Assembly: GCF_032191835.1 (NCBI RefSeq)
Contig: NC_083234.1
Location: 16,120,001-16,184,000, forward strand
DNA: 64,000 nucleotides
Direction of reading: 5' to 3'
DNA from: Heteronotia binoei
Lineage: Eukaryota
Shown here: positions 8,301-27,000 of the stretch, piece after piece
How positions within the stretch are numbered: position 1 is the stretch's first letter
Layout: each line of letters opens with the position of its first letter
Translations under genes and position numbers: made by a program
The notes under the pieces: generated by a model
What the model was told of the DNA's origin: nothing
Databases searched by the model: none
The model's input: only the letters and a program-made list of their open reading frames with translations

Positions 8301-11300
8301 GGCCTCCAGTCCCTGTGCAGCCGGCTGCAAAGCACAGAGCCCAGGGAGGAGTCAGAAAGACCGCAGGAGCCCTGCCCAACCCTCCTTCGGGCACTTGAAT
8401 CTCTCTGGGGGGAGGGGAGACTGTGACCTTCCGCGTGGCCAGAATGCACCCAGCAATCAGTCTCTCTGGAAATGCAGCCCATCTCCCTCCTGCACCCATG
8501 GTAGCTAACCCCACAAAGCCTGCCCATCCCGCCCTCACCTCGGAGCGGGCACAAGGGCAAACTGCTCTCCGTCCCTGGAAGTGAGGGAAGGATGTAGAGC
8601 CTTTTGAGCCTACAGGAGTCTTTGGAATCTGATGAAAGAGTGGCGGGCAAGACACAGCCAGCACGTTTTAGGCACAAGCTCTGCCTAACAGGACGTCTTT
8701 TGAAATGAAGATCCCTTGCATGCATGCGGCTCCCTGTAGATCCTTGTGCTGTGGAGGCAGCAGCTGCCAAAACAACTTCTAAAACATTCATTCAGGCAGC
8801 CAGATCTCCAATGACCAATCAGAAGCCCTGCTGGGGACAAAACCCAACTGGCCCCGCCCACATTCTCAACACACAAGAAAGGTGCAGGCAGCAGCCATGG
8901 GCAGTGGAGACGGCTGCAGGCACAACCAACCTCCAGTGGGGGAGGAGTCTGCCTTCCCAGGAGGTGATGCCCCCGCTGCCCTCCCCCCGCTTACCCTGCT
9001 CCTGTGGCTGGACTCCATTTGCTGGCGGGCCCTGAAAGAGAAAGGAGCCCCCAGAGTCACCTGGATCGGCTGAGCTGCCCGCAGGGTCCCCCCCCGCCCC
9101 CCCAAGCCTGGCCTCTCTGGTGCTCCCCTGCCCAAGCCAGGCCTCCTTCATAACTGGCTGGCCTCTCCTCGGCCACTGGCACTTGGCCTCTAAACCTTCA
9201 ACTCCTCCCACCCCGGGCTTAAAAACGACAGCCACAGGTGCACCCGTCCAAAGATGACTGCATGACTATCTTCTGGCTTCTGTTCCTTTAAAGTCTGGGG
9301 TTACAGTTTCCTAATTTCTTCCAACTGATGCCCCAAAAGCCCTGGACTGGGAGGAAGGAGGAAGAACAACTGGGAATTTCCCAGAGAAATGAAGCAACCA
9401 ACATCGTGCTAATCACACATTCCTGCATTAGAAAGAGAGAGAGGCAAGGCGATGGCTGTGGATGCCCTCTTGCTTTGAAGCCAGTCACCAGACCAGGGGA
9501 CCCAGCGGGGGCATGGCCAGGTTCTGCACTGGCTGCCTTCCAGCTTCCCTGCACGCCCCTCTGCTGAGCTGGCACCTACCTTGGGGTCTGCCTCTTGCAG
9601 CAGAACCTTGGCAGTGAGGCTGGGTGGCAGCTGCGTGCTGACAACCCTGCGGAGAGAGGATGGTTGGATGGACACGCTTCCTCCAGCGGGAGGGGGCATT
9701 TCTTGCGAGCAAGAGAGCTCAAAGCCCAGGCAATGCACTTCAGAGATGGCTTACATCACACGGGGAGCGGTCCACACCAGTGTTCCCTCTAAGCTGAGTT
9801 AGTGTGAGCTAGCTCACAGATTTTAAGCCTCCAGCTCACACATTTGTGTCTTCGCCCAGGAAAAATGCCCCCAAAGCAAACTAATTGATGCAGTAGCTCA
9901 CAAGTTTAATGCCAGTAGCTCATAAAGTAGAATTTTTGCTCCCAAGACTCCGCAGCTTGGAGGGAGTATTGGTCCATAACCACAAGACCATATGCTGAAT
10001 GAAGAGCACTCCCTCCCCAAGTCCTCTTGCAGGCCATAGAGATGAATAGACATGGCTCTGGTCAGAACATGAACACCCATGGAGTTGCCTTCCACTGAGC
10101 CACACCAGTGACCATCAGGTAAGCAATGTCTACTCAGATGAGCAGCGACTCTCTGGGGCCTCAGGTGGAGGACTTTTGCATCACCTACCACCGAGTCCTT
10201 TCACTGAACCTGAGGCTTTTCTGCAGGCCAAGCAGATGCTCCCCCCCTCCCGAGCCTCAGCCCCTCCCTCCCTCCCTCTTTTGAAGTGCAAGCACAGCGT
10301 AGAGGGAGGATTGCCAGTCATTCAGATTCCCTCTTCCAACTCCCCTGCAATCTGGCCAGCAATCCAAAGCCAGGCACAGAGGAGGGAAGGAAGCAAAGGT
10401 AGTTATGTGGATCCAAGACTGTACGTAGACTCATAGAGTTGGAAGGGATCTCCTGGGTCATCTAGTCCAACCCCCTGCACAATGCAGGAAACTCACAAAT
10501 ACCTCCCCCTAAATTCACAAGATCTTCATTGCTGTCAGATGGCCATCTAGTCTCTGTTAAAACCTCCAAGGAAGGAGAGCCCACCACCTCCTGAGGAAGC
10601 CTGTTCCACTGAGGAACCGCTCTAATGATCAGGAATCCTAGAATCATAGAGTTGGAAGGGATCTCCTGGGTCATCTAGTCCAACCCCCTGCACAATGCAG
10701 GAAACTCACAAACACCTCCCCCTAAATTCACAGGATCCTCGTTGCTGTCAGATGGCCATCTAGCCTCTGTTTCAAAACCTCCAAGGAAGGAGAGCCCACC
10801 ACCTCCCGAGGAGGAAGCCTGTTCCACTGAGGAACGGGGATTCATAACTTACCACAACTGGATTCGTAACATATCACCTTCCTCCAGGGGCTTCTTGCTT
10901 GTGGAGAGGCCAGAGGTGGCAGAGAGAAGGGACCACATGTAGGCCCTGGCCTCTCCATCTCCCAAATTGGTCTCAGGCAGCCAGCACAACACTCAACAGC
11001 AGGGGCCAGAGCCTGGCCCCAGAAGAAAGCAGCGTCTCAAGCCTCAGTGAGAGGCAGGTCACCCCACAGCAGCACAGTCCCGGTTTCTAGGCCCTTCAAC
11101 CCCAGTACTCACAGCCCCTTGTAAAGAATGCAGCCAGCCAGCACGTGGAGGGCACGCTGGCACGTCTGGAGGATCAGGGCTGCTTTCAGCAGCAGCAGCG
11201 GATCCACCTGGACAAGAAGACAAGGAGACTTAGGACTTGGGCAGTGCCATGGCAGAGAAGAGCCAGGGGAGGTGAGTCAGTCCCGCCAGGCATTACTTTG

Positions 11301-14028
11301 GTTTTGTCCATGGCCCAAAGGGAGCTGAAGATCCGGTGCAGGTCGCTGGTGTTGTGCTGCAAATGCCTCACGTACTTCTCCCATGCCTGGTCCAGTTCTT
11401 CTCCCAGCCGCTCCTGAGAAGAACACGGAGGAGGCCCCATCAGCCTCTCAAAGAGTCCCAAGGAGAAAGACCACCGGGGAAGGAGAGCTGCTTATCTGCT
11501 CCCTCAGAAAACTGCTCTTCCTACAAACTGGGCATTTGCATACAAAATGCTGGATTTCTGAGAGCACCAACTTGCCACCCTGAACCACCTTTCTGTAAAA
11601 AGAAACCAGGTGGAGAAAAGGTGGAGTTCTGGGCAAGAGCTTTCTCCTGGCTGTGGAAATGGCTGCAGGCTGCTGTCCAACAGGAGAGGACCCTTAGCAG
11701 TAATTCAAGAGGAACCCCAGTTCAGCCCTGGAAACTGATCTTCATGTCAGAAGAGCTGGGCTCTCGATTTCCAGAAGTTCACCACAAAGAAGCAAATGCC
11801 TCTGAGCACATGCAGAACATCAGGCTCTCACAGACCCCTGCCCTTCTTTGCTAGGGAATTAAGGAGGCAAAACTGGGATCCAATGGAAGAGGGCAAACAG
11901 ACCCACCCGCTGTCACCACAGGGTGCCCAGAGAGCTTTGGGGTCACATTCTTGAATGTATGTAAGCAGCCACCTCAACTCCTCCAGAGAACCTCACTGGA
12001 GCTAAGAAGAACTGACTGTTCAGACAAAAGGAAAAGGGGGAAGTGGCAATCCAACAAACAGCATGGTCCAGAAAGCCCACAGCAATGCCCAGAGTGACCT
12101 GGGAGGCATGCTGTTCCCAGGCCCAGGCTGCCAGCTCCCCCAGGGAACCAGGCCCAACTCAGCAGGGCAAGTGGGGGTCAGGAAGAGGCACAGCAGGAGG
12201 GGAAGGAAAGGAGCTCCCAGAAGAGAGTGGAGCAGTCAAGGCCCCCCACTCACCTCATAGGCTTGACCAAGGGGTCCGTTGTAAAAGCAGAAGAGTCCCA
12301 TCAAGTGATCCAGGAAGTGCTGGCAGCTGGTATCAGGCAGGTCGGCAGCACAGCCCAGCACCTGCAGCATGTCAGTGCGTGAGACCAGCACTCCATTCGG
12401 GCATGGCGCCCCTCCCCAGCTCCTGCCGCTTTCACAAGCCACCCCCCCCCCGAGGCTCACCCAAAGGTAGCTGCCGTCCACTCGAACGGCAAACTTGAGC
12501 TTCCTCAGCCGAATGAGCTGCGGCGGAGAGCCAAGGATCTCTGCCATCCAGCGGACCACGCCGGCCACCTGGCTGCAAAGCAGCTCCTGCTGATCCAGAG
12601 GCGTCTGCCAGGGAAGGAGGGAAACGATGTTGCACAGGCTGCTTACTGGGACTGCAGGCGCAGAGGCCAGAACTCAAGTGTGAGGAGCCGGCAGCCAGAG
12701 AGGCCTGTCCCTCAACCCCCCCCCCCCATTACAGAAGAAGTGCATGTGGCAACTCCCCCCGCCCAGCTTGCTGAAGGCACCAGAATAAGAATGGCAAGAC
12801 GGCATCCATAGCTTGGGGCACCAGGACAGCCAGACAGGGCACTACACGCCTTGAGCCACCGCCCAGAAACCTTGTTCTGGAGCCCCCATCCGAAGCAGCA
12901 GAGAGGCTGAAGCCCTGGCCTTCCCAGCGGTCTTTCTCCCGACTTAGTCCCTCTGCTCCCCGGCCGAAGTCTTGTCCAAGGGCTTACCTGGCGAGGGCTG
13001 AAGTAGCAGATGCCGGCTTGTGTGGGGTCCCCTTCTTCCCTCACCTTGGAGCCATCGTACAGGAAGAAGCAATCCCACCTGCACAGCAGCACCGGAGAAG
13101 AAGCGGTCAGGCCAGGCCAGGAGAGAGGGTCAGGCGCCCCCCCTCCAGCTCCGCTCCTGGCCACCTGGGGGGGCGGGACTGGCTGCAAGGGGGGCAGCCC
13201 CTCTGGAGGGAGGGCAGGGGGGAGAGGGGGGCACGTGGGAGGGGGCAGCAGCCGCCCCTCTGGTCGGGGGGGGGCGGCCGGGCTCATCAGGCGGGAGGAG
13301 GGGCGGGAGGGGCACGTGGGAGGGGGCAGCAGCCGCCCCTCTGGTCGGGGGGGGGGGCGGCCGGGCTCATCAGGCGGGAGGAGGGGCGGGAGGGGCACGT
13401 GGGAGGGGGCAGCAGCAGCAGCCCCTCTGGTCGGGGGGGGGGGCGGCCGGGCTCACCAGGCGGGAGGAGGGGGCGGGAGGGGCACGTGGGAGGGGGCAGC
13501 AGCAGCCCCTCTGGAGGGAGGGCGGGGGGGGCACGTGGGAGGGGGCAGCAGCAGCCCCTCTGGAGGGAGGGCGGGGGGGCACGTGGGAGGGGGCAGCAGA
13601 AGCCCCTCTGGAGGGAGGGCGGGGGGGGAAAGGCGGCCGGCTCCCCCGGCGGGAGGAGGGGCGGGAGGGGCACGTGGGAGGGGGCAGCAGCAGCCCCTCT
13701 GGGCCGGGGGGGGGGAGGCGGCCGGCTCCCCCGGCGGGAGGAGGGGCGGGAGGGGCACGTGGGAGGGGGCAGCAGCCGCCCCTCTGGTGGGGGGGGGCGG
13801 CCGGGCTCATCAGGCGGGAGGAGGGGCGGGAGGGGCACGTGGGAGGGGGCAGCAGCAGCCCCTCTGGGCCGGGGGGGGGGGAGGCGGCCGGCTCCCCCGG
13901 CGGGAGGAGGGGCGGGAGGGGCACGTGGGAGGGGGCAGCAGCAGCCCCTCTGGTCGGGGGGGGGGCGGCCGGGCTCACCAGGCGGGGGGAGGGGGGGCGG
14001 GCTCCGGCTGGGGGGCGGCCGAGGCCAT
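2206..14028 (-). CDS. HPS4: HPS4, BLOC-3 complex subunit (Rab32/38 GEF partner of HPS1). CDS span of 13 coding exons, ~555 aa
   Basis: Exons translate to [65 protein letters not shown] and [15 protein letters not shown], matching vertebrate HPS4. Exon sum is 1668 nt (divisible by 3), with GT/AG at all junctions. Confidence 0.95.
4486..4594 (-). CDS. HPS4: HPS4 coding exon 12, [36 protein letters not shown]
   Basis: 109 nt, ctccgcAG acceptor, GTAAGA donor, phase 1 to 2. Too short to appear in the ORF track. Confidence 0.92.
4958..5199 (-). mobile_element. tRNA-derived SINE, diverged subfamily (HPS4 intron)
   Basis: Ends ccactacaccaaactggctctc (reverse complement of the A-box head); (TTC)n-like tail at left. 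Confidence 0.8.
5507..5639 (-). CDS. HPS4: HPS4 coding exon 11, [22 protein letters not shown]...SIQNVLT
   Basis: 133 nt, (ct)n-cAG acceptor, GTGAGT donor. Confidence 0.95.
6483..6903 (-). CDS. HPS4: HPS4 coding exon 10, low-complexity linker plus [22 protein letters not shown]...IQDV
   Basis: The 3' end (GTGAGA donor at 6482) and conserved motif are clear. The 5' boundary is inferred: a phase-2 in-frame AG with a pyrimidine tract before the in-frame TGA at 6960-6962. Confidence 0.7.
7085..7615 (+). mobile_element. CR1 LINE 3' fragment (family with GATTCTAT tail), interrupted
   Basis: Translates [29 protein letters not shown]; 3' UTR ends tatgattctatcattct. Confidence 0.75.
7832..7952 (-). 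CDS. HPS4: HPS4 coding exon 9, [39 protein letters not shown]
   Basis: 121 nt, ctttccccAG acceptor, GTAAGG donor. Similar to human [28 protein letters not shown]. Confidence 0.88.
8995..9031 (-). CDS. HPS4: HPS4 coding exon 8 (37 nt), [12 protein letters not shown]
   Basis: ctctttcAG acceptor, GTAAGC donor. Phases fit the neighbouring exons. Confidence 0.85.
9580..9646 (-). CDS. HPS4: HPS4 coding exon 7, [22 protein letters not shown]
   Basis: ctccgcAG acceptor, GTAGGT donor, conserved motif. Confidence 0.92.
9778..9971. mobile_element. hAT-type MITE
   Basis: TIR CAGTGTTCCCTCTAAGCTG...CAGCTTGGAGGGAGTATTG, imperfect 8-bp TSD gtccacac/gtccataa. Same family as 31318. Confidence 0.75.
10431..10836 (-). 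mobile_element. Two head-to-tail CR1 3' ends (213-bp period)
   Basis: tcatagagttggaagggatctcctgggtcatctagtccaacc starts at both 10431 and 10644. Confidence 0.85.
11113..11207 (-). CDS. HPS4: HPS4 coding exon 6, [31 protein letters not shown]
   Basis: 95 nt, AG/GTGAGT boundaries, conserved peptide. Confidence 0.95.
11297..11413 (-). CDS. HPS4: HPS4 coding exon 5, [14 protein letters not shown]...[19 protein letters not shown]
   Basis: 117 nt, ttctcAG acceptor, GTAATG donor. Confidence 0.95.
12254..12361 (-). CDS. HPS4: HPS4 coding exon 4, [36 protein letters not shown]
   Basis: 108 nt, AG/GTGAGT boundaries. Confidence 0.95.
12461..12604 (-). CDS. HPS4: HPS4 coding exon 3, [17 protein letters not shown]...[16 protein letters not shown]
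   Basis: 144 nt, AG/GTGAGC boundaries. Confidence 0.95.
12988..13078 (-). CDS. HPS4: HPS4 coding exon 2, [30 protein letters not shown]
   Basis: 91 nt, AG/GTAAGC boundaries. Confidence 0.95.
13190..13980. repeat. G-rich VNTR (~45-90-bp units) filling HPS4 intron 1
   Basis: Recurrent ggcgggaggaggggcgggaggggcacgtgggagggggcagcagcagcccctctgg...ggcggccgggctca(c/t)ca units; ten CACGTG cores. Confidence 0.92.
13979..14028 (-). CDS. HPS4: HPS4 coding exon 1, [16 protein letters not shown](W)
   Basis: ATG at 14028 and a TG|GTGAGC phase-2 donor. Splicing recreates the conserved WW dipeptide (human ...SASWWNYFFLY). Confidence 0.88.
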
Positions 14029-14368
14029 CTGGGCGGGAGGGGCCGCACCGCCTCAGCGCATCTCCGGAGGGGCCTCTGCTGGCCGCGGGCGAGGAGGCGG
14101 GGGCGGCGGGCCGGGCGGGAGGAGCGCTCTGCACACGCTCAGAGGCCGCTCGCGGGGCTTCCGGCGGCGGCGGAGGAGGCGGGGCCGACACGTGACACTC
14201 GGGCCCCCTTCCCCAACGCGACTTCCGGCTCTCCGCGGAGGGGCGAGGCGGAGCCGGAAGTGAGGAGCGGGTCTTCTTTCCCGGCTAACTCTCGGAGGGG
14301 CGGTGGCCCCGCCTCCTGCTCCTGTACGGGTGCGGTGGAGGGACAATCGAGGCCGTCCCGCGCGCGGC
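14029..14368. promoter_or_regulatory. HPS4/SRRD bidirectional CpG-island promoter
   Basis: Divergent ATGs 340 bp apart, CpG-dense, no TATA box. ETS/GABP-type CCGGAAG sites at 14157-14164, 14221-14229 and 14254-14262; GACACGTGAC E-box at 14187-14196. Confidence 0.85.
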
Positions 14369-14484
14369 ATGGAGCGCTGCGGAGGAGCCGGAGGCTGGAG
14401 CCGCCCGCGGGGCAGGAGACGGCGGCAGCGGCGGGAGGAGGACGAGGAGCAGCAGCAGCAGAGGCGGCGCCTGCAGGAGGCGCG
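14369..14484 (+). CDS. SRRD: SRRD exon 1, [38 protein letters not shown](R)
   Basis: ggcATGg Kozak context, CG|GTGAGG donor. The W..R-rich N-terminus resembles orthologues. Confidence 0.88.
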
Positions 14485-15776
14485 GTGAGGCTTCCCTGAC
14501 CGGGAGGGGAGGCAGAGGAGGTCTCTCTCTCTGCCCCCTTTGCAGGGGCTCTTGACGCTCCTCGGAGAGCCAGCGGTGGTGTCTGACCTGGAGAACCGGG
14601 CTCCTCCCCCTCCCCCGTGGGGCAGTCACAGTTCTCTCGGAGCTCTCTCAGCCACACGGGGGAGAGGAGGGGAAGTCGACTGACTGCAAGGAAGGGTCGA
14701 AATCCAACCCCTTCTCCTTCCATCCCCACTCCGGCGGCTGGTGCTTATAGCTAGGCTGGCCCTGAACATGCAGTGTCCCACCGCTTTAAGGAAGAGAGCT
14801 TTGCTGGGTTGGCAAGGGGTGCATCGGGCAGCCTCCTGCTCTCAGCTGTGGTCGGCCAGATGCCCAAAGGCCTCCCTCGTCCCTCACGTCTTTTCTGGTG
14901 CTTCTCGGAGTCGTCGTCGGGAGCATCCCAGGGAGGCGTCTTCTTCTCACTTCGGGGCGTGACTCCCTGGCAGCGGTCTTGCTCTGCACACAGCAGAAGC
15001 CAGCGGAGGTGCTGCGGGAGGAGAACCTGTTCTGCCCTGGAGGGGCGCTGGGCAGCCCCATTCAGGGAGAGAGGGCAGCCTAGCAGGCGTGCCGTCCCCA
15101 GCAATACTGACAATGGAGGACGAGGGTCTGATCCTCTCGCTGTATCCGTCTTTCGAGACCGATTAATGCTGCTGCTGCTGCTACCTGTTGGTTTTGGGGG
15201 GACCTGTCTGATTGTCTTTTAGCTGCTAGACTGCAAAGGCCAGGAGTGCAGAAGGAAGGGCAAGCACTGCTTTCACTCATCCTTCCTCCAAGGAACTCCC
15301 TCCCACAGGCATCCCTTCTCATCCTCGCAACAGGCCTGCAAGGGAGCTGGGACTGCAAGAGGCCATCCAAGGGCCTGCTAGTTATTTGAATGCTAAGTGG
15401 GGGGAGGGGGCCTGGATCTGGGGCTCCCAAAAACCTACTCTGGCCCCCTTGCCACTACCTGGTCATGGGCGACAGACCTTTCCGGAGGTGTTACCTAGGG
15501 TGGCCAAGAACAGAACCTCCACGGACAGAGAAACATGTTTTCTGTCAACTTTTCTGCTCTCCTTGGGGCTTTTGGGTAGCCATAGAGGGAGGCAGGAGGC
15601 TGGTGGAAACAGTGCTTGAGCGGGATATTTCCTTGCGCTGACTCCCAAGTGACAGTGCACAAGAGAGTCAATATAATAGAGTGGGTTCCATGCAAGGAAC
15701 ATAAGAACATAAAAGAAGCCATGTTAGATCAGGCCAATGGCCCATCCAGTCCAACATTCTGTGTCACACAGCGGCC

Positions 15777-15834
<58 letters not shown>

Positions 15835-18800
15835 TGGCTAATAGCCACTGATGGACCTCTGCTCCATATTTTTATCTAACCTCCTCTTGAAGGTGGCTAT
15901 GCTTGTGGCCGCCACCACCTCCTGTGGCAGTGAATTCCACATGTTAATCACCCTTTGGGTGAAGAAGTACTTCCTTTTATCCGTTTTAACCTTTCTGCTC
16001 AGCAATTTCATGGAATGCCCACGAGTTCTTGTATTGTGAGAAAGGGAGAAAAGTATTTCTTTCTCTACTTTCTCCATCCCATGCATTATCTTGTAAACCT
16101 CTATCATGTCACCCTGCAGTCGACATAAGAACATAAGAACATAAGAGAAGCCATGTTAGATCAGGCCAATGGCCCATCCAGTCCAACATTCTGTGTCACA
16201 CAGCGGCCAAATATACGCACACACACACACACACACACACACACTGTGGCTAATAGCCACTGATGGACCTCTGCTCCATATTTTTATCTAACCCCCTCTT
16301 GAAGGTGGCCATGCTTGTGGCCGCCACCACCTCCTGTGGCAGTGAATTCCACATGTTAATCACCCTTTGGGTGAAGAAGTACTTCCTTTTATCCGTTTTA
16401 ACCTGTCTGCTCAGCAATTTCATCGAATGCCCACGAGTTCTCGTATTGTGAGAAAGGGAGAAAAGTACTTTCTCTACTTTCTCCATCCCATGCATTATCT
16501 TGTAAACTTCTATCATGTCACCCCTCAGTCGACGTTTCTCCAAGCTAAAGAGTCCCAAGCGTTTCAACCTTTCTTCATAGGGAAAGTGCTCCAGCCCTTT
16601 AATCATTCTAGTTGCCCTTTTCTGGACTTTCTCCAATGCTATAATATCCTTTTTGAGGTGCGGCGACCAGAACTGCACACAGTACTCCAAATGAGACCGC
16701 ACCATCGATTTATACAGGGACATTATGATACTGGCTGATTTGTTTTCAATTCCCTTCCGAATAATTCCCAGCATGGCGTTGGCCTTTTTTATTGCAAACG
16801 CACACTGTCTTGACATTTTCAGTGAATTATCTACCACGACCCCAAGATCTTTTTCATGGTCAGTCTCTGCCACTTCACACCCCATCAAGGAAGAGATGCT
16901 GCTGTTGTGATCATATCTCCTTTATTAGATACAGCATGGCAAAGGCTGAACTCTAGCTGGAGAAGGGGGCCACTATATAATAATAATAATAATAAATTTA
17001 TTTTTGTATCCCGCCCTCCCCCGCCAAAGGCAGGCTCAGGGCGGCTAACACGACACGGTATATACCATGATAGTAAAATACAATATTACAACAAACAATT
17101 AAGCAATTAAAACAAATAAAATTACATTCATAAGTTAAGTTAATATACACTTCAAGGTTCCCGTGCTTGGGCACCATTGGGTCATTCAAACCAGCAGGGG
17201 GGCCATGCTTGGAGCAGGCCAGCAGGGATTTGGATCCTGCTGCCCCTTGTTCCCGAGCCCCCAAGCTCAGTCCTGCAGGCTCCAATGAGCCAGGCAAGAA
17301 CACCTTTAATTATACACAACCTTAGTCCACGTCCACAAAAATTAGCATGCAGATGAACAAACAAAGCTGCCTTATACAGAAGCAGACCCTTGTTCCATTG
17401 TCTCTGCTGGAAGCCGACAGTCACCTACCAACCTATTTAACATCTTCGGAAGTAAAAGACTTTAGAAGACCCTTCACTCTGGCAAGGTGCTCTGTCCTCC
17501 TGCCTGCTGTACTTCAAGGGAAATAGGAGAATATTGCTTTCTGTCCGTTAAGGGAGGCTAGATTGCAGAGCGCCTCTTTTTCATGTGCCCTTATTATAAA
17601 GTGGCACGTAAGGCGTTCATCACCCTGCTGATTGGAAAAAAAAATTGGGATTGCCAGAAAAGGCTAAACGTGAGTTTCTTTTATCTGATTGCCTTCCAAA
17701 TAGCCAGTTTCTGCATGGCCAGACTCAGGTTGCGGGAATTGCATGGCAGTTCGATAGCAGATGGTTATGGTAACTGAATATTAGATGGATTTAAAAATGT
17801 TTTTAGTATTTTTAAAATCTTGGAATCTTGTACATTGGCGTTTTACTTCTGTGCAAGTGGCCCAAGGACCATTGTAACAATAAGCTAACCCCGGCTGATC
17901 CTTTGAGTTGGAGCTGCTGCTGAGGATTGGGGCTGAGGCCTTCTGAGGCCAAGCAGAGGCTCTGCCGCTGAGCCATGGGGGTGGAAGGTAGGAGGGGCCG
18001 TCAGGTAGATGCAAAATTGGAGGGCAGGAAATGCTCAGAAATGTGTCATGACCCTGGAGTTCCTCCCTAGTCTCCCATCCAAGAACTCACCAGGCCGACC
18101 CTGCTTGTCTTCCCAGATCGGATGAGCTTTGGCTAGCCTGAACTGTGGGCCCTCCCCAGTGCTAGGAAGTGCACAATTCTTTGTAATCCATGCAGCAACT
18201 CTGCAAAGTCGGCCAGTAATATGAACGTGATGTTGCAAACTGGTAGCTGAGAAAAAGTGGCCTGATACCGGACCACTTCCTTCCTGTGCTGGGACAGAGG
18301 GCCTTCTGCCTGCCAGCTCAGTTCCTTCGCTGCTCTTCCAGGCTTGCTCTATTGCCCCCCCCCCCCCTGCTGATTTCTGTGAGGCTTGTATCTAAGCTAA
18401 ATGCAGGCAAGAGGGAGGCCTTACAGCAAGAGATGCTGGGGCTCAGGTCCCCTTGGAAGTGTCGCCTCCATAACCTCGTGGAAGGGGGTGGAGCTCAGGG
18501 TGGCATTTTCTTGTGCCTTCAGGGTTTGACCCCTGGTCTCTGTGACAGGTGGGGAGACCTCAACCCTGCCTCTTGTCTCCCACACGCCACACAGAGAGTC
18601 CCCAAATTTACTTTTTCTCCCCTCGTCTTTCTTTCTCACAGGGCAGAACTGCTGGACTCTGAGTTCTGGAATTCAAGTCTGAGTAAGTCCTGGCTTCAAA
18701 GTCTGTTTTCATCCTTTTGAGAAACTCTTGAGATTGTCCACATGGCTCCGGGGAGGGGGAGATGGCTGCCCACCTGCCTCTCAGTCCTGCTTCATTTACG

Positions 18801-20988
18801 CACCCTTTGTTCCCCAGAAAACGCCCAGCCAGGCAGCTACCAAGGAAATTGTGACTTGGGCTTCACAAAGCCAGCCTGGCAGAGGGGGCTATGCTGGCTT
18901 TCCTGCCTTGCCTGGCAAGTGAGGGGTCTTTTTCCTCCTGAGAAGGAGGCCGGGAGGCCTTGGTGGTTTCTGCTGGGATGAAGTGTTGTCGGGCGTGGTG
19001 GTACACCCCGACTCCTGTGCTGCTTGTCCGCCTGCTCCAGAAATCCTCTCAAGATCCCTGCGAGAAGTCCTGGCACACAGGAAAGATTTGCCCATGCCCA
19101 CCGGGGATGATGCCCTCTTGGCATTGGAGGAGCTGCAGCTGTGCCCTCCAGCCCACCTGCCTGGAAGAGCCTGCTTGCGGTGTGTGTGTTATGGCCTGGG
19201 CAACTTCTCTTCCTGCTTTAAGGCCCGCTTCCAGCTGGCATTTCTGCTGCTGCTGCTGCAGGAACTCCAGGTGAGTGTCTGCCCCTCCCTTGGCAGGGCT
19301 CAGCCCACTGGCCCAGAGGCCCCACCCCTCTCCCAGCAGCCTGCCTCCTCCGCTTCTCTCCCTCCCTGGCAGGTTCCGGAGGAGTGTCTCTGCCCCCTCC
19401 CTTGGCAGGGCTCAGCCCACTGGCCCAGAGACCCCTCCCCTCTCCCAGCAGCCTGCCTCCTCCGCTTCTCTCCCTCCCTGGCAGGTTCCGGAGGAGTGTC
19501 TCTGCCCCCTCCCTTGGCAGGGCTCAGCCCACTGGCCCAGAGGCCCCACCCACCAGCAGCCTGCCTCCTCCGCTTCTCTCCCTCCCTGGCAGGTTCCGGA
19601 GGAGTGTCTCTGCCCCCTCCCTTGGCAGGGCTCAGCCCACTGGCCCAGAGACCCCTCCCCTCTCCCAGCAGCCTGCCTCCTCCGCTTCTCTCCCTCCCTG
19701 GCAGGTTCCGGAGTGTCTCTGCCGCCTCCCTTGGCAGGGCTCAGCCCACTGGCCCAGAGGCCCCACCCACCAGCAGCCTGCCTCCTCCCCTTCTCTCCCT
19801 CCCTGGCAGGTTCCGGAGGGGCTTTGCTGTGTCTTTGATCCTGCTTTCTCCCTGTTGGAAAGGGAAGTTCTCAGCAGCCTTGGCTTCTCTGTCCTCTTGT
19901 GGAATGAGGTGCGTGCCATCTTTGCCTGGGGGATGCCCAGAGCACCAGGTGGCCCTCATTGGGGGAGGGGCTGGGGGTAAGGGGGCTGCCTGTCCCCACA
20001 ATCTGGTGGTGGGGAGGGTTGGGGCTGGCTGGAGTTTCTAGTTTGCTGCTGGTCTTGATTGCAGGAGGGGAAGCGTCCCATAGATGAGCCCACAGTCTTC
20101 TACATGGTCCACTGTGGCAAAGCCCTCTACAACAACCTGCTGTGGAGCAACTGGTCAGCAGAGGCCTTGTCCAAAATGGTCATCGTAGGCAACAGTTTCA
20201 AGGGGATTGAAGAAAGGTGCCCCCTCCCCAAAGGACTGCTGGGGAGGGGGTAAAGGGGCCTCTCTAGCTGGCCCCCAACCTGCCCCTCATGCTTTCTGTC
20301 CCTTTGGCTTCTAGGGTCCCGGGCAGGATATTCCAAAGGGATTACGCTTACATTGCCAAGGTAGGCTGGGTGAGTGTGGGTGGGGTGAGGACATGGCTGT
20401 GTCTCCAGCTGCCAGTTTGGGGGAAACTTGACTCGGGACTTCCCCACCCCCCATCTGGTTGTGTTCTGACATCTGGCCCAAGAGCTCACGTCCCCTTCCA
20501 TGTTGGGGGGTGGGATGGGGGTGGCACACGCTGCTCTCACATCAGCCAGTTGTTGAGCTGTGCCACCCTCTGCTGCGCAGGCAACCCCAGAACCTCTGCA
20601 GCCTCTCAGAGTGGACCTTTCTCAACAATAGCGTATTTCTTGAGTTATATCCAGTGAATTCTGAGGTTAAGATGGGTCATGCAAGGGGGAGGGGAGCTCT
20701 GCTTGGCCTGTGTGTGAGCTGCCCCATTGCTCTGGGCCTGTTGCTGGCAGGCCCCCTCACGACCGATTCTCTCCCTGTGCCAACCATGGGCAGATATTAA
20801 CAGCCTCGGAGGAAGACGCCCTCCCTCCCCACGACAGGTTTCTGGATGTGTTCAACGACACGGCCGTCCACCGCTTCCCGTGGCAGAAGCTGAGGGAGGT
20901 GCCCCGAGAGACGTGGGCCTTCCACGAGGAGCCCCTTTACCCTCCCCAGGACCAGTTAGAGATCATCAGGAACAGCGACGGGACTTAG
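14369..20988 (+). CDS. SRRD: SRRD, SRR1-domain-containing protein. CDS span of 7 exons, 292 aa
   Basis: Contains [19 protein letters not shown]...[33 protein letters not shown] and [10 protein letters not shown], typical of SRR1/SRRD. Exon sum is 879 nt. Confidence 0.95.
15698..16124 (-). mobile_element. 5'-truncated CR1 (TTCTTATG tail) with a (TA)n(CA)n microsatellite in the 3' UTR
   Basis: RT C-terminal peptide [16 protein letters not shown]...[15 protein letters not shown]. Confidence 0.92.
16125..16888 (-). mobile_element. 5'-truncated CR1 joined directly to the previous copy
   Basis: ORF 16250-16888 is a CR1 ORF2 RT C-terminus ([18 protein letters not shown]...[11 protein letters not shown]). 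Confidence 0.93.
16975..17130 (-). mobile_element. L2-like LINE 3' tail fragment
   Basis: (ATT)n tail plus tcccgccctcccc...ctcagggcggct, similar to the tail at 61225-61300. Confidence 0.5.
18642..18682 (+). CDS. SRRD: SRRD exon 2 (41 nt), [13 protein letters not shown]
   Basis: Long pyrimidine tract with cacAG acceptor, GTAAGT donor. Similar to human DLFISDFWSSAL. Confidence 0.92.
19041..19270 (+). CDS. SRRD: SRRD exon 3, ILSRSL...[30 protein letters not shown]
   Basis: ctccAG acceptor, GTGAGT donor, phase 1 to 0. Confidence 0.92.
19271..19809 (+). repeat. Five tandem 102-112-bp copies forming all of SRRD intron 3
   Basis: Each unit ends cttctctccctccctggcAG|GTTCCG; first exon-like bases at 19373, 19485, 19593, 19705 and 19810. 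Confidence 0.93.
19810..19908 (+). CDS. SRRD: SRRD exon 4, [33 protein letters not shown]
   Basis: 99 nt, in phase. Similar to human [33 protein letters not shown]. Confidence 0.92.
20065..20216 (+). CDS. SRRD: SRRD exon 5, [30 protein letters not shown]...GIEE(R)
   Basis: 152 nt with AG/GT boundaries and a highly conserved peptide. Confidence 0.95.
20315..20360 (+). CDS. SRRD: SRRD exon 6 (46 nt), [15 protein letters not shown]
   Basis: cttctAG acceptor, GTAGGC donor. Confidence 0.92.
20794..20988 (+). CDS. SRRD: SRRD exon 7 (last), [12 protein letters not shown]...[10 protein letters not shown]
   Basis: gggcAG acceptor, TAG at 20986-20988. Confidence 0.93.
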   Translation: MLTASEEDALPPHDRFLDVFNDTAVHRFPWQKLREVPRETWAFHEEPLYPPQDQLEIIRNSDGT

Positions 20989-23110
20989 CTTCAGAGACTG
21001 GCCAAGAGGCAGTCAGCTGCAAGACTGCCATTTGCTCCTGGCTTCGTACCAAACTGAAGTCGACTCCATGGTCTGCCTGCTCCGGAAGCAGAGGGGCCTG
21101 TGCCCTTGGATCCTCTGGCAGAGCTCAGGGCACGCCCCCACCCAAGGCTGAACGGATGGACGCCCTGAGCAGCAGCAGGGGGCGCTCTGCTGAGGCTTCC
21201 GCTTAGGTCATCAGCAAGTGCAGCAGGGGTGGTGGGGGGAGGAGGCCTGTGAGGGAGCTGGTGCAGTTGGGATCTCGGTGTTCTTCTCTCTGGCTCAGCT
21301 TACAGCTGCTCCGTCAGCCAAAGAAAAAGGCAGCTGTTCTGGGAAACCAAACCTTAGCACAAATCGTGGATGTTTATTTTTAAAAAAAAAATGGTTTAAA
21401 ACTCTGACTTTTTGTGTCATTTTATTCTTTCCAGAGTGTGAGAATAAGATTTTGCATTTCTGTCGTCTAGCTCATGCATCTGGCCAGAGGTAGTGGAACA
21501 GCAGCTGCCTCCACAGGCTCGCTCTCCACTGAGACCCAGACAGGAAGGCCAGAGATCCAGAACAGCAGAGCTGCTTTGGAGCAGAGGAGTGACTGACTGA
21601 CTGGTATGGCCTCTAGCAGACCAGAAACAGCGGAATAGCAGGAGATTCCTGTCTGGGCCCAAGTGCAAAGAAGCATTTGAGAATGGCAGGAATGTCTGAC
21701 TAAACACAAGTGAGGATACAGTTCACGAATGGGGTACATCGGTTTATTTGTGAAAACATTTCTATCCAGCCTTTTCTTGTGGTGTCAAGTGACTGGGAAA
21801 GCAGCAGTCTCATGTATGAGAAAAAAGCAGTCACGCATTTTGGTGTTCTTGGTTAAGACTCAGAGTGCTAAAAATGTATTAACACGGCACTGAGATGTTT
21901 TTACAAAAATGCATGCGTACGTATAACAGGGTGCGCATTCTTTCCTAACTGCTTTATGTTTATACAAGGAATAAGGCCCCTTGTGAAGAAAAATACAACG
22001 GCTCTAGAAAGAGGCTATGGGCAAGTGCCCCCCCCCCATTCACCCCCACCACCTCCAGGGGAGATCTCTGCCAGCCAGAGAGCTCTTGTAATACTGAGTG
22101 ATCTCAGCCCTCACCTGGAGATCGGCAACAATGGTTCCCCAGAGGAAACTGCTGGTTTGGAGGGCGGAGTGCATGGCATTGCACCTGTTGGAGATCCCAT
22201 CCCCTTTTCAGATCCCACCTTCTCCAGGCCGCACCCCTTAAATCTTGAGGAATTTCTTAACCTGGAGTTGGGAACCCTATCTCCTTCTCTTTATCTGCTC
22301 AACTTAAGCTTTCCATTACATCCCCCCTCCCTGCAGCCTCCTGTAGGGAAAGGACAGTCTTTCTCCACAGCAGCGGGGACCAAAGCAGCTTACATCATTC
22401 TCCTCTCCTCCTGAACAACAACCCTGTGAGGCAGGTTAGGCTGGAAGTTTGTGACTGGTCTGAAATCCTCCCGTCAGCTTCCACAGCAAGAACGTGGGTC
22501 TGGCAGACCTTGCTCTAAAGCCCTAATGCCTATGGCCTCCACCACAGGATCTGCAGGGCTTTCCTACCAATCTGGAACTGGCCCCAACGAGTTCTCCCTC
22601 AGAGGCCTTGAGTGATACGTCCAGACCAACAGTCCGTCTCTGATAATGTTGTGGGTCTTAAGCATGAAACTTCAGTCTCTCCATGTGTCTCACTTTCCCA
22701 CCGTATCTCTCTCTATATCTGCTCTGTTCTCACAGGATACCATCTGTTCCGCTTTCCAGGAAGGTAGGAGTCCTCAGCCAATCAAGGGAAGCCTTTCTCT
22801 GGCTGTTTCCCTCCTCCTTCCTCAGCTAATTGAGGGAATGTGACAGGCAGCTCAGCCAATGGGAGAGTAGGGAGAGCCAGCAACTGCCAGAACTAAGGTT
22901 GGTTGCCGTTTACTGACATAATGAACTTTGCTGGCTAGCAGCAGCCACTTGGATGGGTGGGAGACAGAAGCGGATTCAACCAATGGCATGCAAATACTCT
23001 TGACTTGGCCAAGGGCTGACGCACCACAGTCCCAACCAATCAGGCTGCTGTTTTGCCAAGAGGGGTTTTATTATGTCCTAGAATAGAGAGTTGTATCTTG
23101 CTCTGAATAG

Positions 23111-23121
23111 AATAAAATAAA
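23111..23121 (+). terminator. Possible SRRD polyadenylation signal (overlapping AATAAA x2)
   Basis: First canonical hexamer I could find after the SRRD stop; it would imply a ~2.1-kb 3' UTR. Confidence 0.35.
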
Positions 23122-23546
23122 TTAGAAAAGCTGATTTTGAAAACCTGTAACTGACATGGAGCATTTTCACTGAAGAGTGTTTTCCTGGGGAACCTGTTTG
23201 CTTTTGGCAAGAAAGAGCAAATAGCCTCAAGTAATCACTCCTATGTCATTAAATATTGTTTTGATAAACTGGAGAGAGGATTCTGCTGTAATGTTTTCAC
23301 TTGCTTACTGTATCAAACCCAAAGCATTGTGGGGGGCACATACCTCCGGCTCCTTATGTGCATGGGGCCACGCAACAGAGGCGGGCCCTGGAGACACCTG
23401 CCAGGCTCCCGCACCACCTCAGCTCCAGCCTCCGACCCCCGCTCTGTTCTGCTGGGAGCTCATCACGGCCCAGAAGGGTGGGATGTGAAACTTCCAGGCC
23501 TGCAAATGAGTGGACTGGACACTCACTAACACAAAAGAAAATTCAT

Positions 23547-23552
23547 TTTATT
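23547..23552 (-). terminator. Putative TFIP11 polyadenylation signal AATAAA
   Basis: ~120 nt after the stop codon, followed by a U-rich tract on the minus strand. Confidence 0.7.
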
Positions 23553-23669
23553 TACACAATGAAGCCTCTTCAAGCACAAGAGGCCTGGACCCCAGAGCTG
23601 TGCTTGGATGAAGCCCTTGAATGCTGCTGCTGCTGCTGCCACTGCCAGTGTGGGCCCAGCCCCTCGCCC

Positions 23670-24025
23670 TCATTTTGTCATGTCAATGAGGCTCTGCAGG
23701 GAGGTGGGGACCCAGGTCTTCTCCCCCTGCACAAAGACCACCCCCCGGTCGATGTAGATGACAATGCGCCCAAAGGTGTACAGCTGCTTCCCTTCGTGCC
23801 GCTTCCCAATGACGGGCATGAAGACAATGTTGTGCTCCTCAGCCTTGGTCTGGATCAGGTCCTTGAAGTTCATGGGCACCGAGCCGGCGGCCATGCCAAT
23901 CCCCCGCTGAGCCATGTTCTCGGCTTCCCGCCGCTCCTGCATGGCCTCGTACTGGAAGTCCTTCCGGCGCTCCGTGTGCGTCAGGTAAGCGATGTTTTCT
24001 CGGGCACCAGGTTGCATGTAGCCCC
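23670..24025 (-). CDS. TFIP11: TFIP11 coding exon 12 (last)
   Basis: ctAG acceptor; [14 protein letters not shown]...SLIDMTK*. Confidence 0.95.
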
Positions 24026-27000
24026 CTAGCCCAGCAAAGAGAGAGGAAATGGTGAAGAGGGAACCGCTTAGCTTCTCCTTTGGGGCAGGAGACGGCACCG
24101 GGCCCTGACACTCAGGAGTGGGTAGGGAAGAACCACCTCTAGCAACTGGCACTGGCTTCTGGGAGGGCTTTGGGAGCAACTTCTCCTCCCCCCCCGGGGC
24201 AGAGTCACATGGCGGGGCCCAATTTGGCACCCCCAGAAGGCAATGGCTTGGTTTGCCTAGTGGCCCGGCCAGCCCTGATTGACTGAGATTCAGGTGAGGC
24301 AGCAACACTGAGCCAGCCCCTCCCTCGCCCATGGCTCAAAGGCAGCAGAGGCCCTTGGGCCAGAGCTAGCAACCGACTCACGCACCAACACTGGAAGAGA
24401 CGGCTCTGTTCATGACGTCCAGGGCTTCGTTGAATTTCTCCTTGACGGAGGGGTGGGCCAGCACCTGGTCTGAGAACATCGACTTCCAGCCCAGATACCA
24501 CTTGGTGATCTCTTCGTAATTAGGGTTGTTACTTAGCCAGGAGCACAGGACCTAGAAGGGGGGTGGAGGAGGCTGAAGCACGCCTGGGCTGGAACGGAGC
24601 TGACGCAGACAGTGGGCAAGGAGGCAGAGAGGAGAATTCTGCAGGTGGGGTCACATACCTGCAGCCACTTGGGAAAGAAGTGCTTCTCCAGCAGCCCCAC
24701 CAGGCTGGAGACAGAGATCATGCCCTCCCAGTCCATCACCCAGAAGAAGGCATCCATGTGCTGCTGGTGAGGGTTGATCAGCAGCTCGTTCAGGCACAGA
24801 CCTGCAGGAAGGAGAGAGGGACGAAACCACCTGAAGTCACCTTGGCCTGCAGCAAAGCTCCAAGCCTTCTGCTCTACCCTGCAGGCTCCGCGCAGCCAAG
24901 AATTTCCTGCAGGCGAATGTGGAAGACGGAACCTGGGACTAGACATTATGGGAAAGCTCTGCTGGTTTCCCAGGCTCATTTGTACAAGAATGGTTCTCTG
25001 TGCTGCTGAAGAGGCAGGCAAGGGGCTCTTCAGACGCTGCCTCCTCCTGGACACAAGGCCCTCCCTGCTGTGCAAGGGGACAGTCCCTGATTCCTGCAGC
25101 CCAAGCCTTTCTCTGCAACCCTCAGTCCTCCCCTCCCCTGGCCACCCCCAGCAAGCCAAGCAGAGAGAAAAGAGTGAAAGGAGCACCACAGGGGCCAGCC
25201 CGATCTCAGGCAAGTTGACCAGAGAGCCTGCTGATGCAAATGGGGGGCTTGACCTGGAAGCCCCTGGTGTCCCACTCTGTTTGTCTGCCGGGCTCTCCTT
25301 ACCCAGCTTTGGCACAATATTCTTGATCATGAAGGCCTCCCAGGACCCCGGGGTGAAGACCTCCTTCCAGGGCTGCAGGATGAGCTTGGCAGAGGAGTCG
25401 CTGGGGTGCCACTTCTGCAGGGCGCTGGCCAGCTTGTTGCGGATGGGGGAGTAGAGGGGCTCCAGGCGGGCCTGCATCAGGGGCAGCCAGGGGTGGATCC
25501 ACGAGTGGATGGGGACCGTGTCCGTCAGCGGGTTCCAGTTCTCCACCTGCAGGGCGGAGCAGAAGCCAGCTCTGTGGTGGACCGTCAAGGATCCTGCAGA
25601 GGCAGCCACACTGAGGGAGGCGCCTTCCTACCTCCTTCTGCAGCTTGGGGAAAACGAGCTGGTCGAGAATGTTCTCCAGGATCCAGACGGGAATGATGGG
25701 CGCCCAGCTGTCCAGGAAGTCCACCATGGGGATGCAGTTCCGGGGCTGCCACTGCCCTGCAATGTTCCGCACGTAGGGCATCCACGTCTCCCACATCAGC
25801 CTGAGCAGGAGAGACCCTCTCACTGAGTGCTGCAGCTGGGGCCATGGCCACGCAAGAGAACACGCATCAAGCAGGGATTCTAATCACTGCTTCCTTCTTG
25901 GCAACGCAAATGCCACTGACTCATCACCAAGACCTCCTTCCCCATCTTCTCTCCAGATCTGAGGGCCAGACTGTCACCCTGCCAGGCAGGGGAGGGGGTG
26001 GTGCTGGTGGGTCCCTACCCCAAGGGTCACAGCAGAGCAGCTCTAGGGGAGAAAGGCTCAGCCTCCCCTCCCTCCACAAGCCAGGCAGCCCATTTACCGG
26101 TGGAAAGCATCCGAGGAGAGGTCCTGCCCACCGTGCGACAACAGCTGGTCATTCTCCAGCAAGCTCTTCCACTGGCCCAGGATGTCCGTGCCGTACGTGC
26201 AGTCCTGGGGAGAGAGGAAGGAAAGAGGCCCAAAGATGGAGCACATGGGGACCCGGGAGGGAGGGAGGGAAGGGGGCCTTGCTCCCCAGCACGGGACCAG
26301 CCGTGTGCTTTCTGCTGTGCTTGTTTTGAAGTTTCTTTTAACCCTTTCCATAGGGGAACAGGGCCGTGGATGCCTCTGAGGCAGAAAGACACTGCACGCA
26401 CTTCCCATATCTGGTGTTTGGAGGCAGAATTTGCCCGGGGGGGGGGGGGAGAGATGACTTTGTGCCACTCTCCCCCAATGGCCTCTTCCAACCCCACCCA
26501 CCCAATGCCAGGAAGGTCGAGACCTCCAGCCACCCACCTTCAACGGGTCCCAGTTCTTGAAGTAGTCTTTCACCAGTGGGAACACAATGGCAGCGGCCAG
26601 ATCCACACGGTCGGACATCCGGTACTCCTCGTAATACTTATCCTGGAGAGTCTCGAAGACCTTGGCGCACTCGGCCAGGGTCAGGGGGTTGTCGCAGCCG
26701 GGTTGCATCCGCCGCTCACACTCCTCCACCGTCTCCAGGACCTTGCTGAGGTTCCGGATCTCAGCCTCCTGGCGCGCCAGGACCTCATCCATCTTCTCGA
26801 TCTCGTGGGTCAGGTTGACCACTTGGTCCCGCTCATACTGCAGCTGCCGGTCGTTCTGGATGATCTCCTGCTCGGTGAGGTCGATGAGGAGCTGCAGGTT
26901 GTGCTCCAGCTCGGGCAGGGCGAAGGCCTGGGGCTTGGCGTCCTTGCCCAGGGGCAGCGGCTGCTGGGGGTTGTCGTCGGGGATGTTGTGCTTCTGGCTG

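What the first reader, a model, noticed from the sequence alone, without database searches (positions are those of the whole stretch)
19271..19818. SRRD intron 3 is five tandem copies of an entire intron, leaving five near-identical 3' splice sites
Seen: each unit is the intron from +3 (GAGTGTCT...) to its AG plus the first exon-4 bases GTTCCG(GAG). The last junction (GTTCCG-GAGTGT) shows a GAG microhomology. Only unit 1 keeps the GT donor, but all keep the pyrimidine tract and cAG|GTTCCG (19373, 19485, 19593, 19705, 19810). Offsets to the true exon are 437, 325, 217 and 105 nt. The first three shift the frame; 19705 is in frame and stop-free, adding 35 aa ([35 protein letters not shown]) inside the SRR1 domain. 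Each unit also has a second cccttggcAG. Inference: the spliceosome must skip four proximal decoys, so this is a natural test of 3' splice-site choice and possibly a copy-number-dependent NMD rheostat.
Basis: partly seen in the sequence, partly recalled or inferred. Interest (0 to 1): 0.75.

Follow-up and report, generated by a model that had tools for sequence, protein, structure and literature searches.

The report
Five-fold repeated intron in gecko SRRD
In Bynoe's gecko a once-tiny intron of the SRRD gene has been copied head to tail, splice acceptor included, so four decoy acceptors now precede the real one; this kind of splice-site-copying repeat is already known, and nothing shows it does more than sit there.

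Summary
Window 19273-19818 holds five tandem units of 108-112 nt (96% mean column identity). Each unit is the old intron 3 from base +3 to its AG, plus the first 9 nt of exon 4. The window is Heteronotia binoei CM063336.1, and the gene is SRRD (SRR1 domain), lying between HPS4 and TFIP11.

A second assembled copy of the locus, on CM063335.1, carries the same 539-nt five-unit intron with one substitution. An assembly artefact is therefore very unlikely.

In seven other squamates, five of them geckos, intron 3 is single-copy and 80-100 nt long, and it aligns with the Heteronotia unit from end to end. The array is thus a lineage-specific expansion of a whole short intron.

The class is known: amphioxus "mirage" minisatellites, and the human F7 intron-7 VNTR as its donor-side mirror. 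In both, the extra sites are silent.

The "NMD rheostat" idea has no support. The two copies have equal unit number, and each has a single RefSeq isoform using 19270>19810.

The scan already reported this array on the other copy (s1-321126).

The parts
19041..19270 (+). SRRD exon 3 (ends in phase 0 with ...CTC CAG, residue Q129 of XP_060106914.1)
   Evidence: The translation matches P0097 and Pfam SRR1 profile positions 15-47.
19271..19276 (+). The only 5' splice site of intron 3 (CAG|GTGAGT)
   Evidence: Read directly from the sequence. The later units begin GAGTGT and have no GT at that place.
19273..19381 (+). Unit 1 (109 nt). Its decoy acceptor AG ends at 19372, 102 nt from the donor
   Evidence: Use of this acceptor gives frame +2 and a first stop in exon 5.
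19382..19493 (+). Unit 2 (112 nt, A-type). Its decoy acceptor AG ends at 19484
   Evidence: Use of this acceptor gives a stop at 19836.
19494..19601 (+). Unit 3 (108 nt, B-type). Its decoy acceptor AG ends at 19592
   Evidence: Use of this acceptor gives a stop at 19836.
19602..19710 (+). Unit 4 (109 nt, A-type). It equals unit 2 except for the missing terminal GAG. Its decoy acceptor AG ends at 19704 and is in frame, adding 35 aa
   Evidence: 0 substitutions against unit 2.
19711..19818 (+). Unit 5 (108 nt, B-type). It holds the authentic branch region, pyrimidine tract and acceptor (AG ends at 19809) and the first 9 nt of exon 4
   Evidence: It has a G>C at -21 relative to the other units. 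The one difference from the second genomic copy is at 19724.
19810..19908 (+). SRRD exon 4 (99 nt, V130-E162), followed by the donor GAG|GTGCGT
   Evidence: The RefSeq protein junction is LQELQ|VPEGLCC.
20065..20216 (+). SRRD exon 5

Best explanation
This is a young minisatellite of the 'mirage' type, specific to the Heteronotia lineage. A mirage is a tandem duplication that spans an intron/exon boundary.

The ancestral intron 3 of SRRD was about 100 nt. A tandem duplication ran from intron base +3 to exon-4 base +9, with breakpoints sharing 1-3 nt (GAG). It created a second copy of the branch region, pyrimidine tract, AG and the first exon bases, but not of the GT donor. Later unequal exchange, including duplication of a two-unit block (units 2-3 giving units 4-5), brought the array to five units and a 539-nt intron. 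These steps are shown by the sequence and by comparison with relatives.

The rest is inferred, not shown. The productive mRNA is made by joining 19270 to 19810. The acceptor beside the real exon probably wins because only it is followed by real exon sequence and by a good donor 99 nt downstream (exon definition). The decoys are followed by C-rich, intron-like sequence. Any decoy use would be a minor by-product. From three decoys it would be removed by nonsense-mediated decay. From the fourth it would yield a protein with a 35-aa proline-rich loop insertion. The array itself has no function.
For: Array and units.

Homology of the whole unit to single-copy introns:
- Gekko kuhli 99 nt, G. japonicus 100 nt, Paroedura picta 94 nt, Eublepharis macularius 87 nt, Podarcis muralis 80 nt.
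- Two further Logan contigs, 86 nt (lizard, species unknown) and about 100 nt (gecko-like).

Two-unit periodicity and unit relations: units 2 and 4 differ by 0 substitutions; units 3 and 5 differ by 2.

The second assembled copy on CM063335.1 has the same five units and one substitution in 610 aligned bases. Its flanks differ by 0.38% substitutions and many indels, and a nearby VNTR differs by about 2 units.

The RefSeq proteins of both copies (292 aa, a single isoform each) use the distal junction, and Pfam SRR1 is colinear across it.

There is no RNA family match and no unusual RNA structure in the intron (z = +1.17).

Precedent: mirages in amphioxus Adh, TnC, globin and PGBD5 duplicate splice sites without producing aberrant mRNAs (PMC3087553; PMC3902484). 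In the human F7 intron-7 VNTR only the site next to the exon is used (PMC1557585).
Against: The RefSeq model may rest on protein homology rather than on transcripts.

The first decoy together with the donor recreates the ancestral 102-nt intron exactly. Short introns can be recognised across the intron. Classic duplicated-acceptor constructs gave conflicting results: the F7 paper says globin constructs used the proximal copy, while another group found the opposite. Substantial use of decoy 1 therefore cannot be excluded from sequence alone.
Confidence: 0.78

Rival explanations
1. Regulatory reading. The decoy acceptors are used at an appreciable and possibly tissue-dependent rate. SRRD output would then be tuned through NMD, with the dose set by the number of units.
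For: All four decoys keep an intact CAG|G, pyrimidine tract and upstream CAGCAG branch region. Three give premature stops upstream of later exon junctions.
Against: - The two assembled copies have the same unit number, while a neighbouring VNTR varies between them.
- The intact decoys are explained by youth, since the units differ by only 0-5 substitutions.
- There is only one annotated isoform.
- Known mirages and the F7 VNTR are silent.
- An earlier scan note on the other copy reports only normal splicing. I did not check that note.
Confidence: 0.1
2. Damaging reading. Pairing across the intron between the donor and decoy 1, which recreates the ancestral 102-nt intron, takes most transcripts. 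SRRD in this gecko would then be a hypomorph or on its way to becoming a pseudogene.
For: Decoy 1 matches the authentic site over -20 to +9 and lies at the ancestral distance from the donor. The older globin constructs cited in PMC1557585 used the proximal copy.
Against: - The reading frame is intact in both copies, which differ by 1 aa in 292.
- All residues invariant across 22 vertebrate orthologues are retained.
- The decoys carry only 9 nt of exon sequence.
- The array is too young for decay of the gene to be visible, so this counter-evidence is weak.
Confidence: 0.07
3. Assembly artefact. The true intron would have one unit, or fewer than five.
For: Tandem repeats can be mis-assembled. 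I could not inspect raw reads.
Against: - The same five-unit structure, including the 3-nt deletion and the unit variants, was assembled independently on CM063335.1 with one substitution.
- The units are not identical to one another.
- At 539 nt the array is far shorter than a long read.
Confidence: 0.02
4. Recursive splicing. Exon 4 starts with GT, so joining exon 3 to a decoy recreates CAG|GTTCCG. That site could act as a donor towards the next acceptor, removing the intron stepwise and leaving a normal mRNA.
For: The CAG|GT juxtaposition is present at all five sites.
Against: GTTCCG matches the donor consensus only at +1 and +2. It has T at +3, C at +4 and C at +5. Known recursive sites need a strong regenerated donor and occur in very long introns (my own knowledge).
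Confidence: 0.03

Closest known systems
Amphioxus 'mirage' minisatellites (Adh3, troponin C, globins BflGb6/BflGb9, PGBD5)
   Same: They are head-to-tail repeats whose unit spans an intron/exon boundary and copies the splice signal. BflGb6 copies the 3' end of an intron plus the 5' part of the next exon in 150-160-bp units, with 3-6 copies. Splicing is reported as normal (PMC3087553; PMC3902484).
   Different: Here the host is a vertebrate (a gecko). The unit is almost the entire intron (+3 to AG) with only 9 nt of exon. No copy-number difference is seen between the two copies available. Amphioxus mirages are length-polymorphic and even somatically unstable.
Human F7 intron-7 37-bp VNTR
   Same: It is a minisatellite whose first unit spans an exon/intron boundary. 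It produces 5-9 splice sites identical in sequence, of which only the one adjacent to the exon is used (PMC1557585).
   Different: F7 repeats the 5' splice site downstream of the exon. Here the 3' splice site, with its branch region and pyrimidine tract, is repeated upstream of the exon. Use in F7 was tested experimentally; here it was not.
Engineered tandem duplications of globin splice acceptors (cited in PMC1557585 as refs 40-42)
   Same: One donor faces duplicated, identical acceptors.
   Different: Those are artificial two-copy constructs with differing amounts of exon sequence. Their results conflict (proximal copy versus the opposite). Here there are five natural copies in a 539-nt intron.

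Membership tests
Mirage-type minisatellite (tandem duplication across an intron/exon boundary) | Head-to-tail tandem repeats of a 10-200-bp unit | tested here: met
   4.9 copies of about 110 nt, with 91-96% matches.
Mirage-type minisatellite (tandem duplication across an intron/exon boundary) | The unit contains the boundary itself, both the splice signal and the adjacent exon bases, in register with the authentic junction | tested here: met
   CAG|GTTCCGGAG occurs five times, and the last occurrence is the authentic exon-4 start.
Mirage-type minisatellite (tandem duplication across an intron/exon boundary) | Derived state: relatives have the single-copy boundary | tested here: met
   Single-copy introns of 80-100 nt in seven other squamates. 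They are alignable with the unit.
Mirage-type minisatellite (tandem duplication across an intron/exon boundary) | Regular splicing is not disturbed | not testable with these tools
The only indirect evidence is a single RefSeq isoform using the distal junction.
Mirage-type minisatellite (tandem duplication across an intron/exon boundary) | Length polymorphism or instability | tested here: inconclusive
   The two assembled copies both have five units. Only two alleles or copies were available.
SRRD / SRR1-domain gene | SRR1 domain (PF07985), with orthology shown by sequence and synteny | tested here: met
   Pfam hits on exons 3-5. The window is 100% identical to the locus encoding XP_060106914.1, 'SRR1-like protein'. 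The gene is flanked by HPS4-type (Intu_longin) and TFIP11-type (TIP_N, G-patch, GCFC) genes, as in other lizards.
Recursive splice site | A 3' splice site directly followed by a strong regenerated 5' splice site (GTRAGT-like) | tested here: not met
   The regenerated site is GTTCCG, which matches the consensus only at +1 and +2.
NAGNAG / short-range tandem acceptors | Alternative AGs a few nucleotides apart that share one branch point and pyrimidine tract | tested here: not met
   The acceptors are 105-112 nt apart, and each has its own tract and branch region.

The most novel reading that the evidence does not exclude
The decoys are not fully silent. A measurable, perhaps tissue- or temperature-dependent, share of SRRD transcripts would use them. 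One product would be the in-frame +35-aa isoform, whose insertion falls in the loop between helix 112-127 and strand 135-138 of the SRR1 fold. That would make this locus a natural five-way competition assay for 3' splice-site choice in a vertebrate, with identical sites that differ only in position.
Probability: 0.15. Interest if true: 0.55.

Novelty: new member of a known kind. Interest (0 to 1): 0.3.

Why it matters
Five acceptors with identical core signals differ only in their distance from the donor and from the real exon. That separates position and context from site strength in 3' splice-site choice, as the F7 VNTR did for donors.

If the decoys are silent, as I expect, the locus is a clean natural example that exon context outweighs both proximity and the ancestral intron-sized pairing. 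It also shows how a minimal intron can grow fivefold in one lineage.

Earlier scan notes, which I did not check, list several other splice-site-copying arrays in this genome. The broader point may therefore be a genome-wide tendency rather than this one locus.

Tried and rejected
- **Word search with single exons.** This was not possible because of its length window, so exon 3 went to the exhaustive representative search to obtain a full-length orthologue id.
- **Joined exons.** Exons were searched by reference, and full-length proteins were taken from the database.
- **Pogona vitticeps locus.** It is not on record.
- **Decoy-spliced or partial Heteronotia products.** Searches with P0097 and with P0097:70-200 found none. 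This is weak negative evidence, because the collection seems to hold no Heteronotia transcript contigs for this gene.
- **Rfam.** No match within 2 kb, so a mirtron or snoRNA origin of the unit is rejected.
- **RNA folding.** The fold is no better than shuffled sequence (z = +1.17), so masking of the decoys by structure is rejected.
- **Transposable-element origin of the unit.** Rejected, because the unit aligns end to end with single-copy orthologous introns.
- **Recursive splicing.** Judged unlikely because the regenerated donor is poor.
- **Literature search for natural acceptor-side VNTRs in vertebrates.** It found nothing specific.

Full report
**What is there.** Reading window 18900-20200 shows exon 3 of a gene ending ...CTC CAG, followed by the donor GTGAGT at 19271. 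Tandem Repeats Finder reports one array at 19278-19819, either as 4.9 copies of a 112-nt unit (91% matches, score 918) or as 2.5 copies of a 220-nt double unit (96%, score 993).

An exact search finds CAGGTTCCGGAG five times, with the AG ending at 19372, 19484, 19592, 19704 and 19809. Cutting at GAGTGTCT gives units of 109, 112, 108, 109 and 108 nt, with 96% mean column identity.

Units 2 and 4 are identical except that unit 4 lacks the last GAG. Units 3 and 5 differ by two substitutions. Unit 1 is intermediate. The last growth step was therefore a duplication of the two-unit block. Only unit 1 is preceded by GT; the others start GAGTGT.

**The gene and the genome.** The translated exons 3, 4 and 5 each hit Pfam SRR1 (PF07985) colinearly. 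Exon 3 ends at profile position 47, and residue 6 of exon 4 aligns to position 53.

An exhaustive search with exon 3 gave lizard SRR1-like proteins. A word search with the Pogona protein then listed gecko orthologues. One of them, XP_060106914.1 of Heteronotia binoei (P0097, 292 aa), equals the window's exons. Its locus on CM063336.1 (GCA_032191835.1) is 100% identical to the window over 18.6 kb.

The neighbours are HPS4-like and TFIP11-like genes, as in Podarcis, Paroedura and Eublepharis. The RefSeq protein reads LQELQ|VPEGLCC, which is the junction 19270>19810.

**Real or artefact.** The assembly holds a second copy of the HPS4-SRRD-TFIP11 block, near the end of CM063335.1 (L007; protein XP_060105451.1, 1 aa different).

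- Over 13.7 kb it differs from the window by 51 substitutions (0.38%) and many indels.
- The VNTR on the HPS4 side has 10.9 copies there against 9.0 here.
- Intron 3 is 539 nt in both, with the same spacing of 112, 108, 112 and 105 nt. There is a single substitution in 610 aligned bases, at window 19724.

Two independent assemblies of the same non-identical five units make an artefact very unlikely. They also show no difference in unit number.

**Origin.** Intron 3 is single-copy in every other squamate I could fetch:

| Species or source | Intron 3 length |
|---|---|
| Gekko kuhli | 99 nt |
| G. japonicus | 100 nt |
| Paroedura picta | 94 nt |
| Eublepharis macularius | 87 nt |
| Gecko-like Logan contig | about 100 nt |
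| Podarcis muralis | 80 nt |
| Logan contig from a lizard of unknown species | 86 nt |

The Heteronotia unit aligns with the Gekko and Eublepharis introns from the GTGAGTGTCTC start, through GGGCTCAGCC and CAGCAG, to CCTCCCTGGCAG. The unit is therefore the ancestral intron and not a mobile element.

The duplicated segment runs from intron +3 to exon-4 +9. The junction GTTCCGGAG|GAGTGT allows 1-3 nt of microhomology. The other geckos start exon 4 with ATT or ATC, whereas all five Heteronotia copies have GTT, so that change predates the duplication.

**Predicted consequences of decoy use (for the in-frame case).**

- Acceptor 19373: a 102-nt intron and a 536-nt exon. The frame shifts, and the first stop falls in exon 5 after 184 codons.
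- Acceptors 19485 and 19593: a stop at 19836.
- Acceptor 19705: in frame, adding 35 aa.

An AlphaFold model of P0097 (mean pLDDT 81.6) places the exon 3/4 junction (Q129|V130) in the loop between helix 112-127 and strand 135-138. The in-frame product would therefore carry a long proline-rich loop insertion in the fold.

All five acceptors are identical from -20 to +6. The authentic one differs by a G>C at -21, which removes a purine from its tract.

Each unit has further AGs: after ...CCCTTGGC, and in CAGCAG. The stretch from CAGCAG to the main AG, about 33 nt, has no other AG. The CAGCAG element is conserved among geckos. That makes it the likely branch region, which is an inference.

**How it most likely works.** Nothing points to a function for the array. 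There is no Rfam match, and the RNA fold is no better than shuffled sequence (z = +1.17).

I infer that the acceptor next to the real exon is chosen for two reasons. It alone is followed by real exon sequence and by the donor GAG|GTGCGT 99 nt downstream. The decoys are followed by C-rich intron-like sequence and would define exons of 204-536 nt.

This matches the described precedents. Amphioxus mirages duplicate splice sites without producing aberrant mRNAs (PMC3087553; PMC3902484). In the human F7 intron-7 VNTR only the site adjoining the exon is used, although the pseudo-sites are functional (PMC1557585).

The caveat is real. The donor plus decoy 1 recreates the ancestral 102-nt intron, and the older duplicated-acceptor constructs gave conflicting answers.

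Two searches for proteins carrying decoy junctions, or for partial Heteronotia transcripts, found none. The collection seems to hold no Heteronotia transcript contigs for this gene, so this says little.

I list it as a lead that agrees with my reading, not as evidence.

**Verdict.** The structural interpretation and the prediction about relatives are correct. The rheostat idea is unsupported.

The locus is a new vertebrate member of a known class, splice-site-copying minisatellites. Earlier scan notes (s1-337998, s1-318594, s1-335958, s1-321189; unchecked) suggest that this class is common in this genome. Interest is modest: it is a neat natural substrate for acceptor-choice experiments, but probably a neutral young repeat.

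Noticed in passing
L007 (CM063335.1 85363775-85382411) vs window 8369-26988: The HPS4-SRRD-TFIP11 block is present twice in the 21-chromosome assembly. One copy is at 16.13 Mb of CM063336.1. The other lies within the last 120 kb of CM063335.1. They differ by 0.38% substitutions plus many indels. This is either a retained haplotig scaffolded at a chromosome end or a very recent segmental duplication.
   Followed up: partly
window 13228-14001: A G-rich 86-nt VNTR lies on the HPS4 side of the shared promoter, with 9.0 copies here and 10.9 in the other copy. Some units carry CTCACC (GGTGAG on the minus strand) and others carry mutated versions.
   Followed up: partly
L003 4329-4458 (Gekko japonicus KQ754655.1): The G. 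japonicus SRRD model reads LLLLLK-DGCLCLPPWQ-IPEE. The old Illumina assembly lacks the GTGAGT donor at this place (it has GATGGGTGGCG and a long C run), and the model translates the end of the intron. This is probably an assembly or annotation error, not biology.
   Followed up: no
window 19886-19888 (codon of residue 159): The window copy encodes Leu where the second Heteronotia copy and the other geckos have Ser (SVLS/SVLL). It is the only amino-acid difference between the two copies.
   Followed up: no
window 15700-16560: Two adjacent copies of about 430 nt of an interspersed repeat, each with a (CA)n tract, lie in SRRD intron 1.
   Followed up: no
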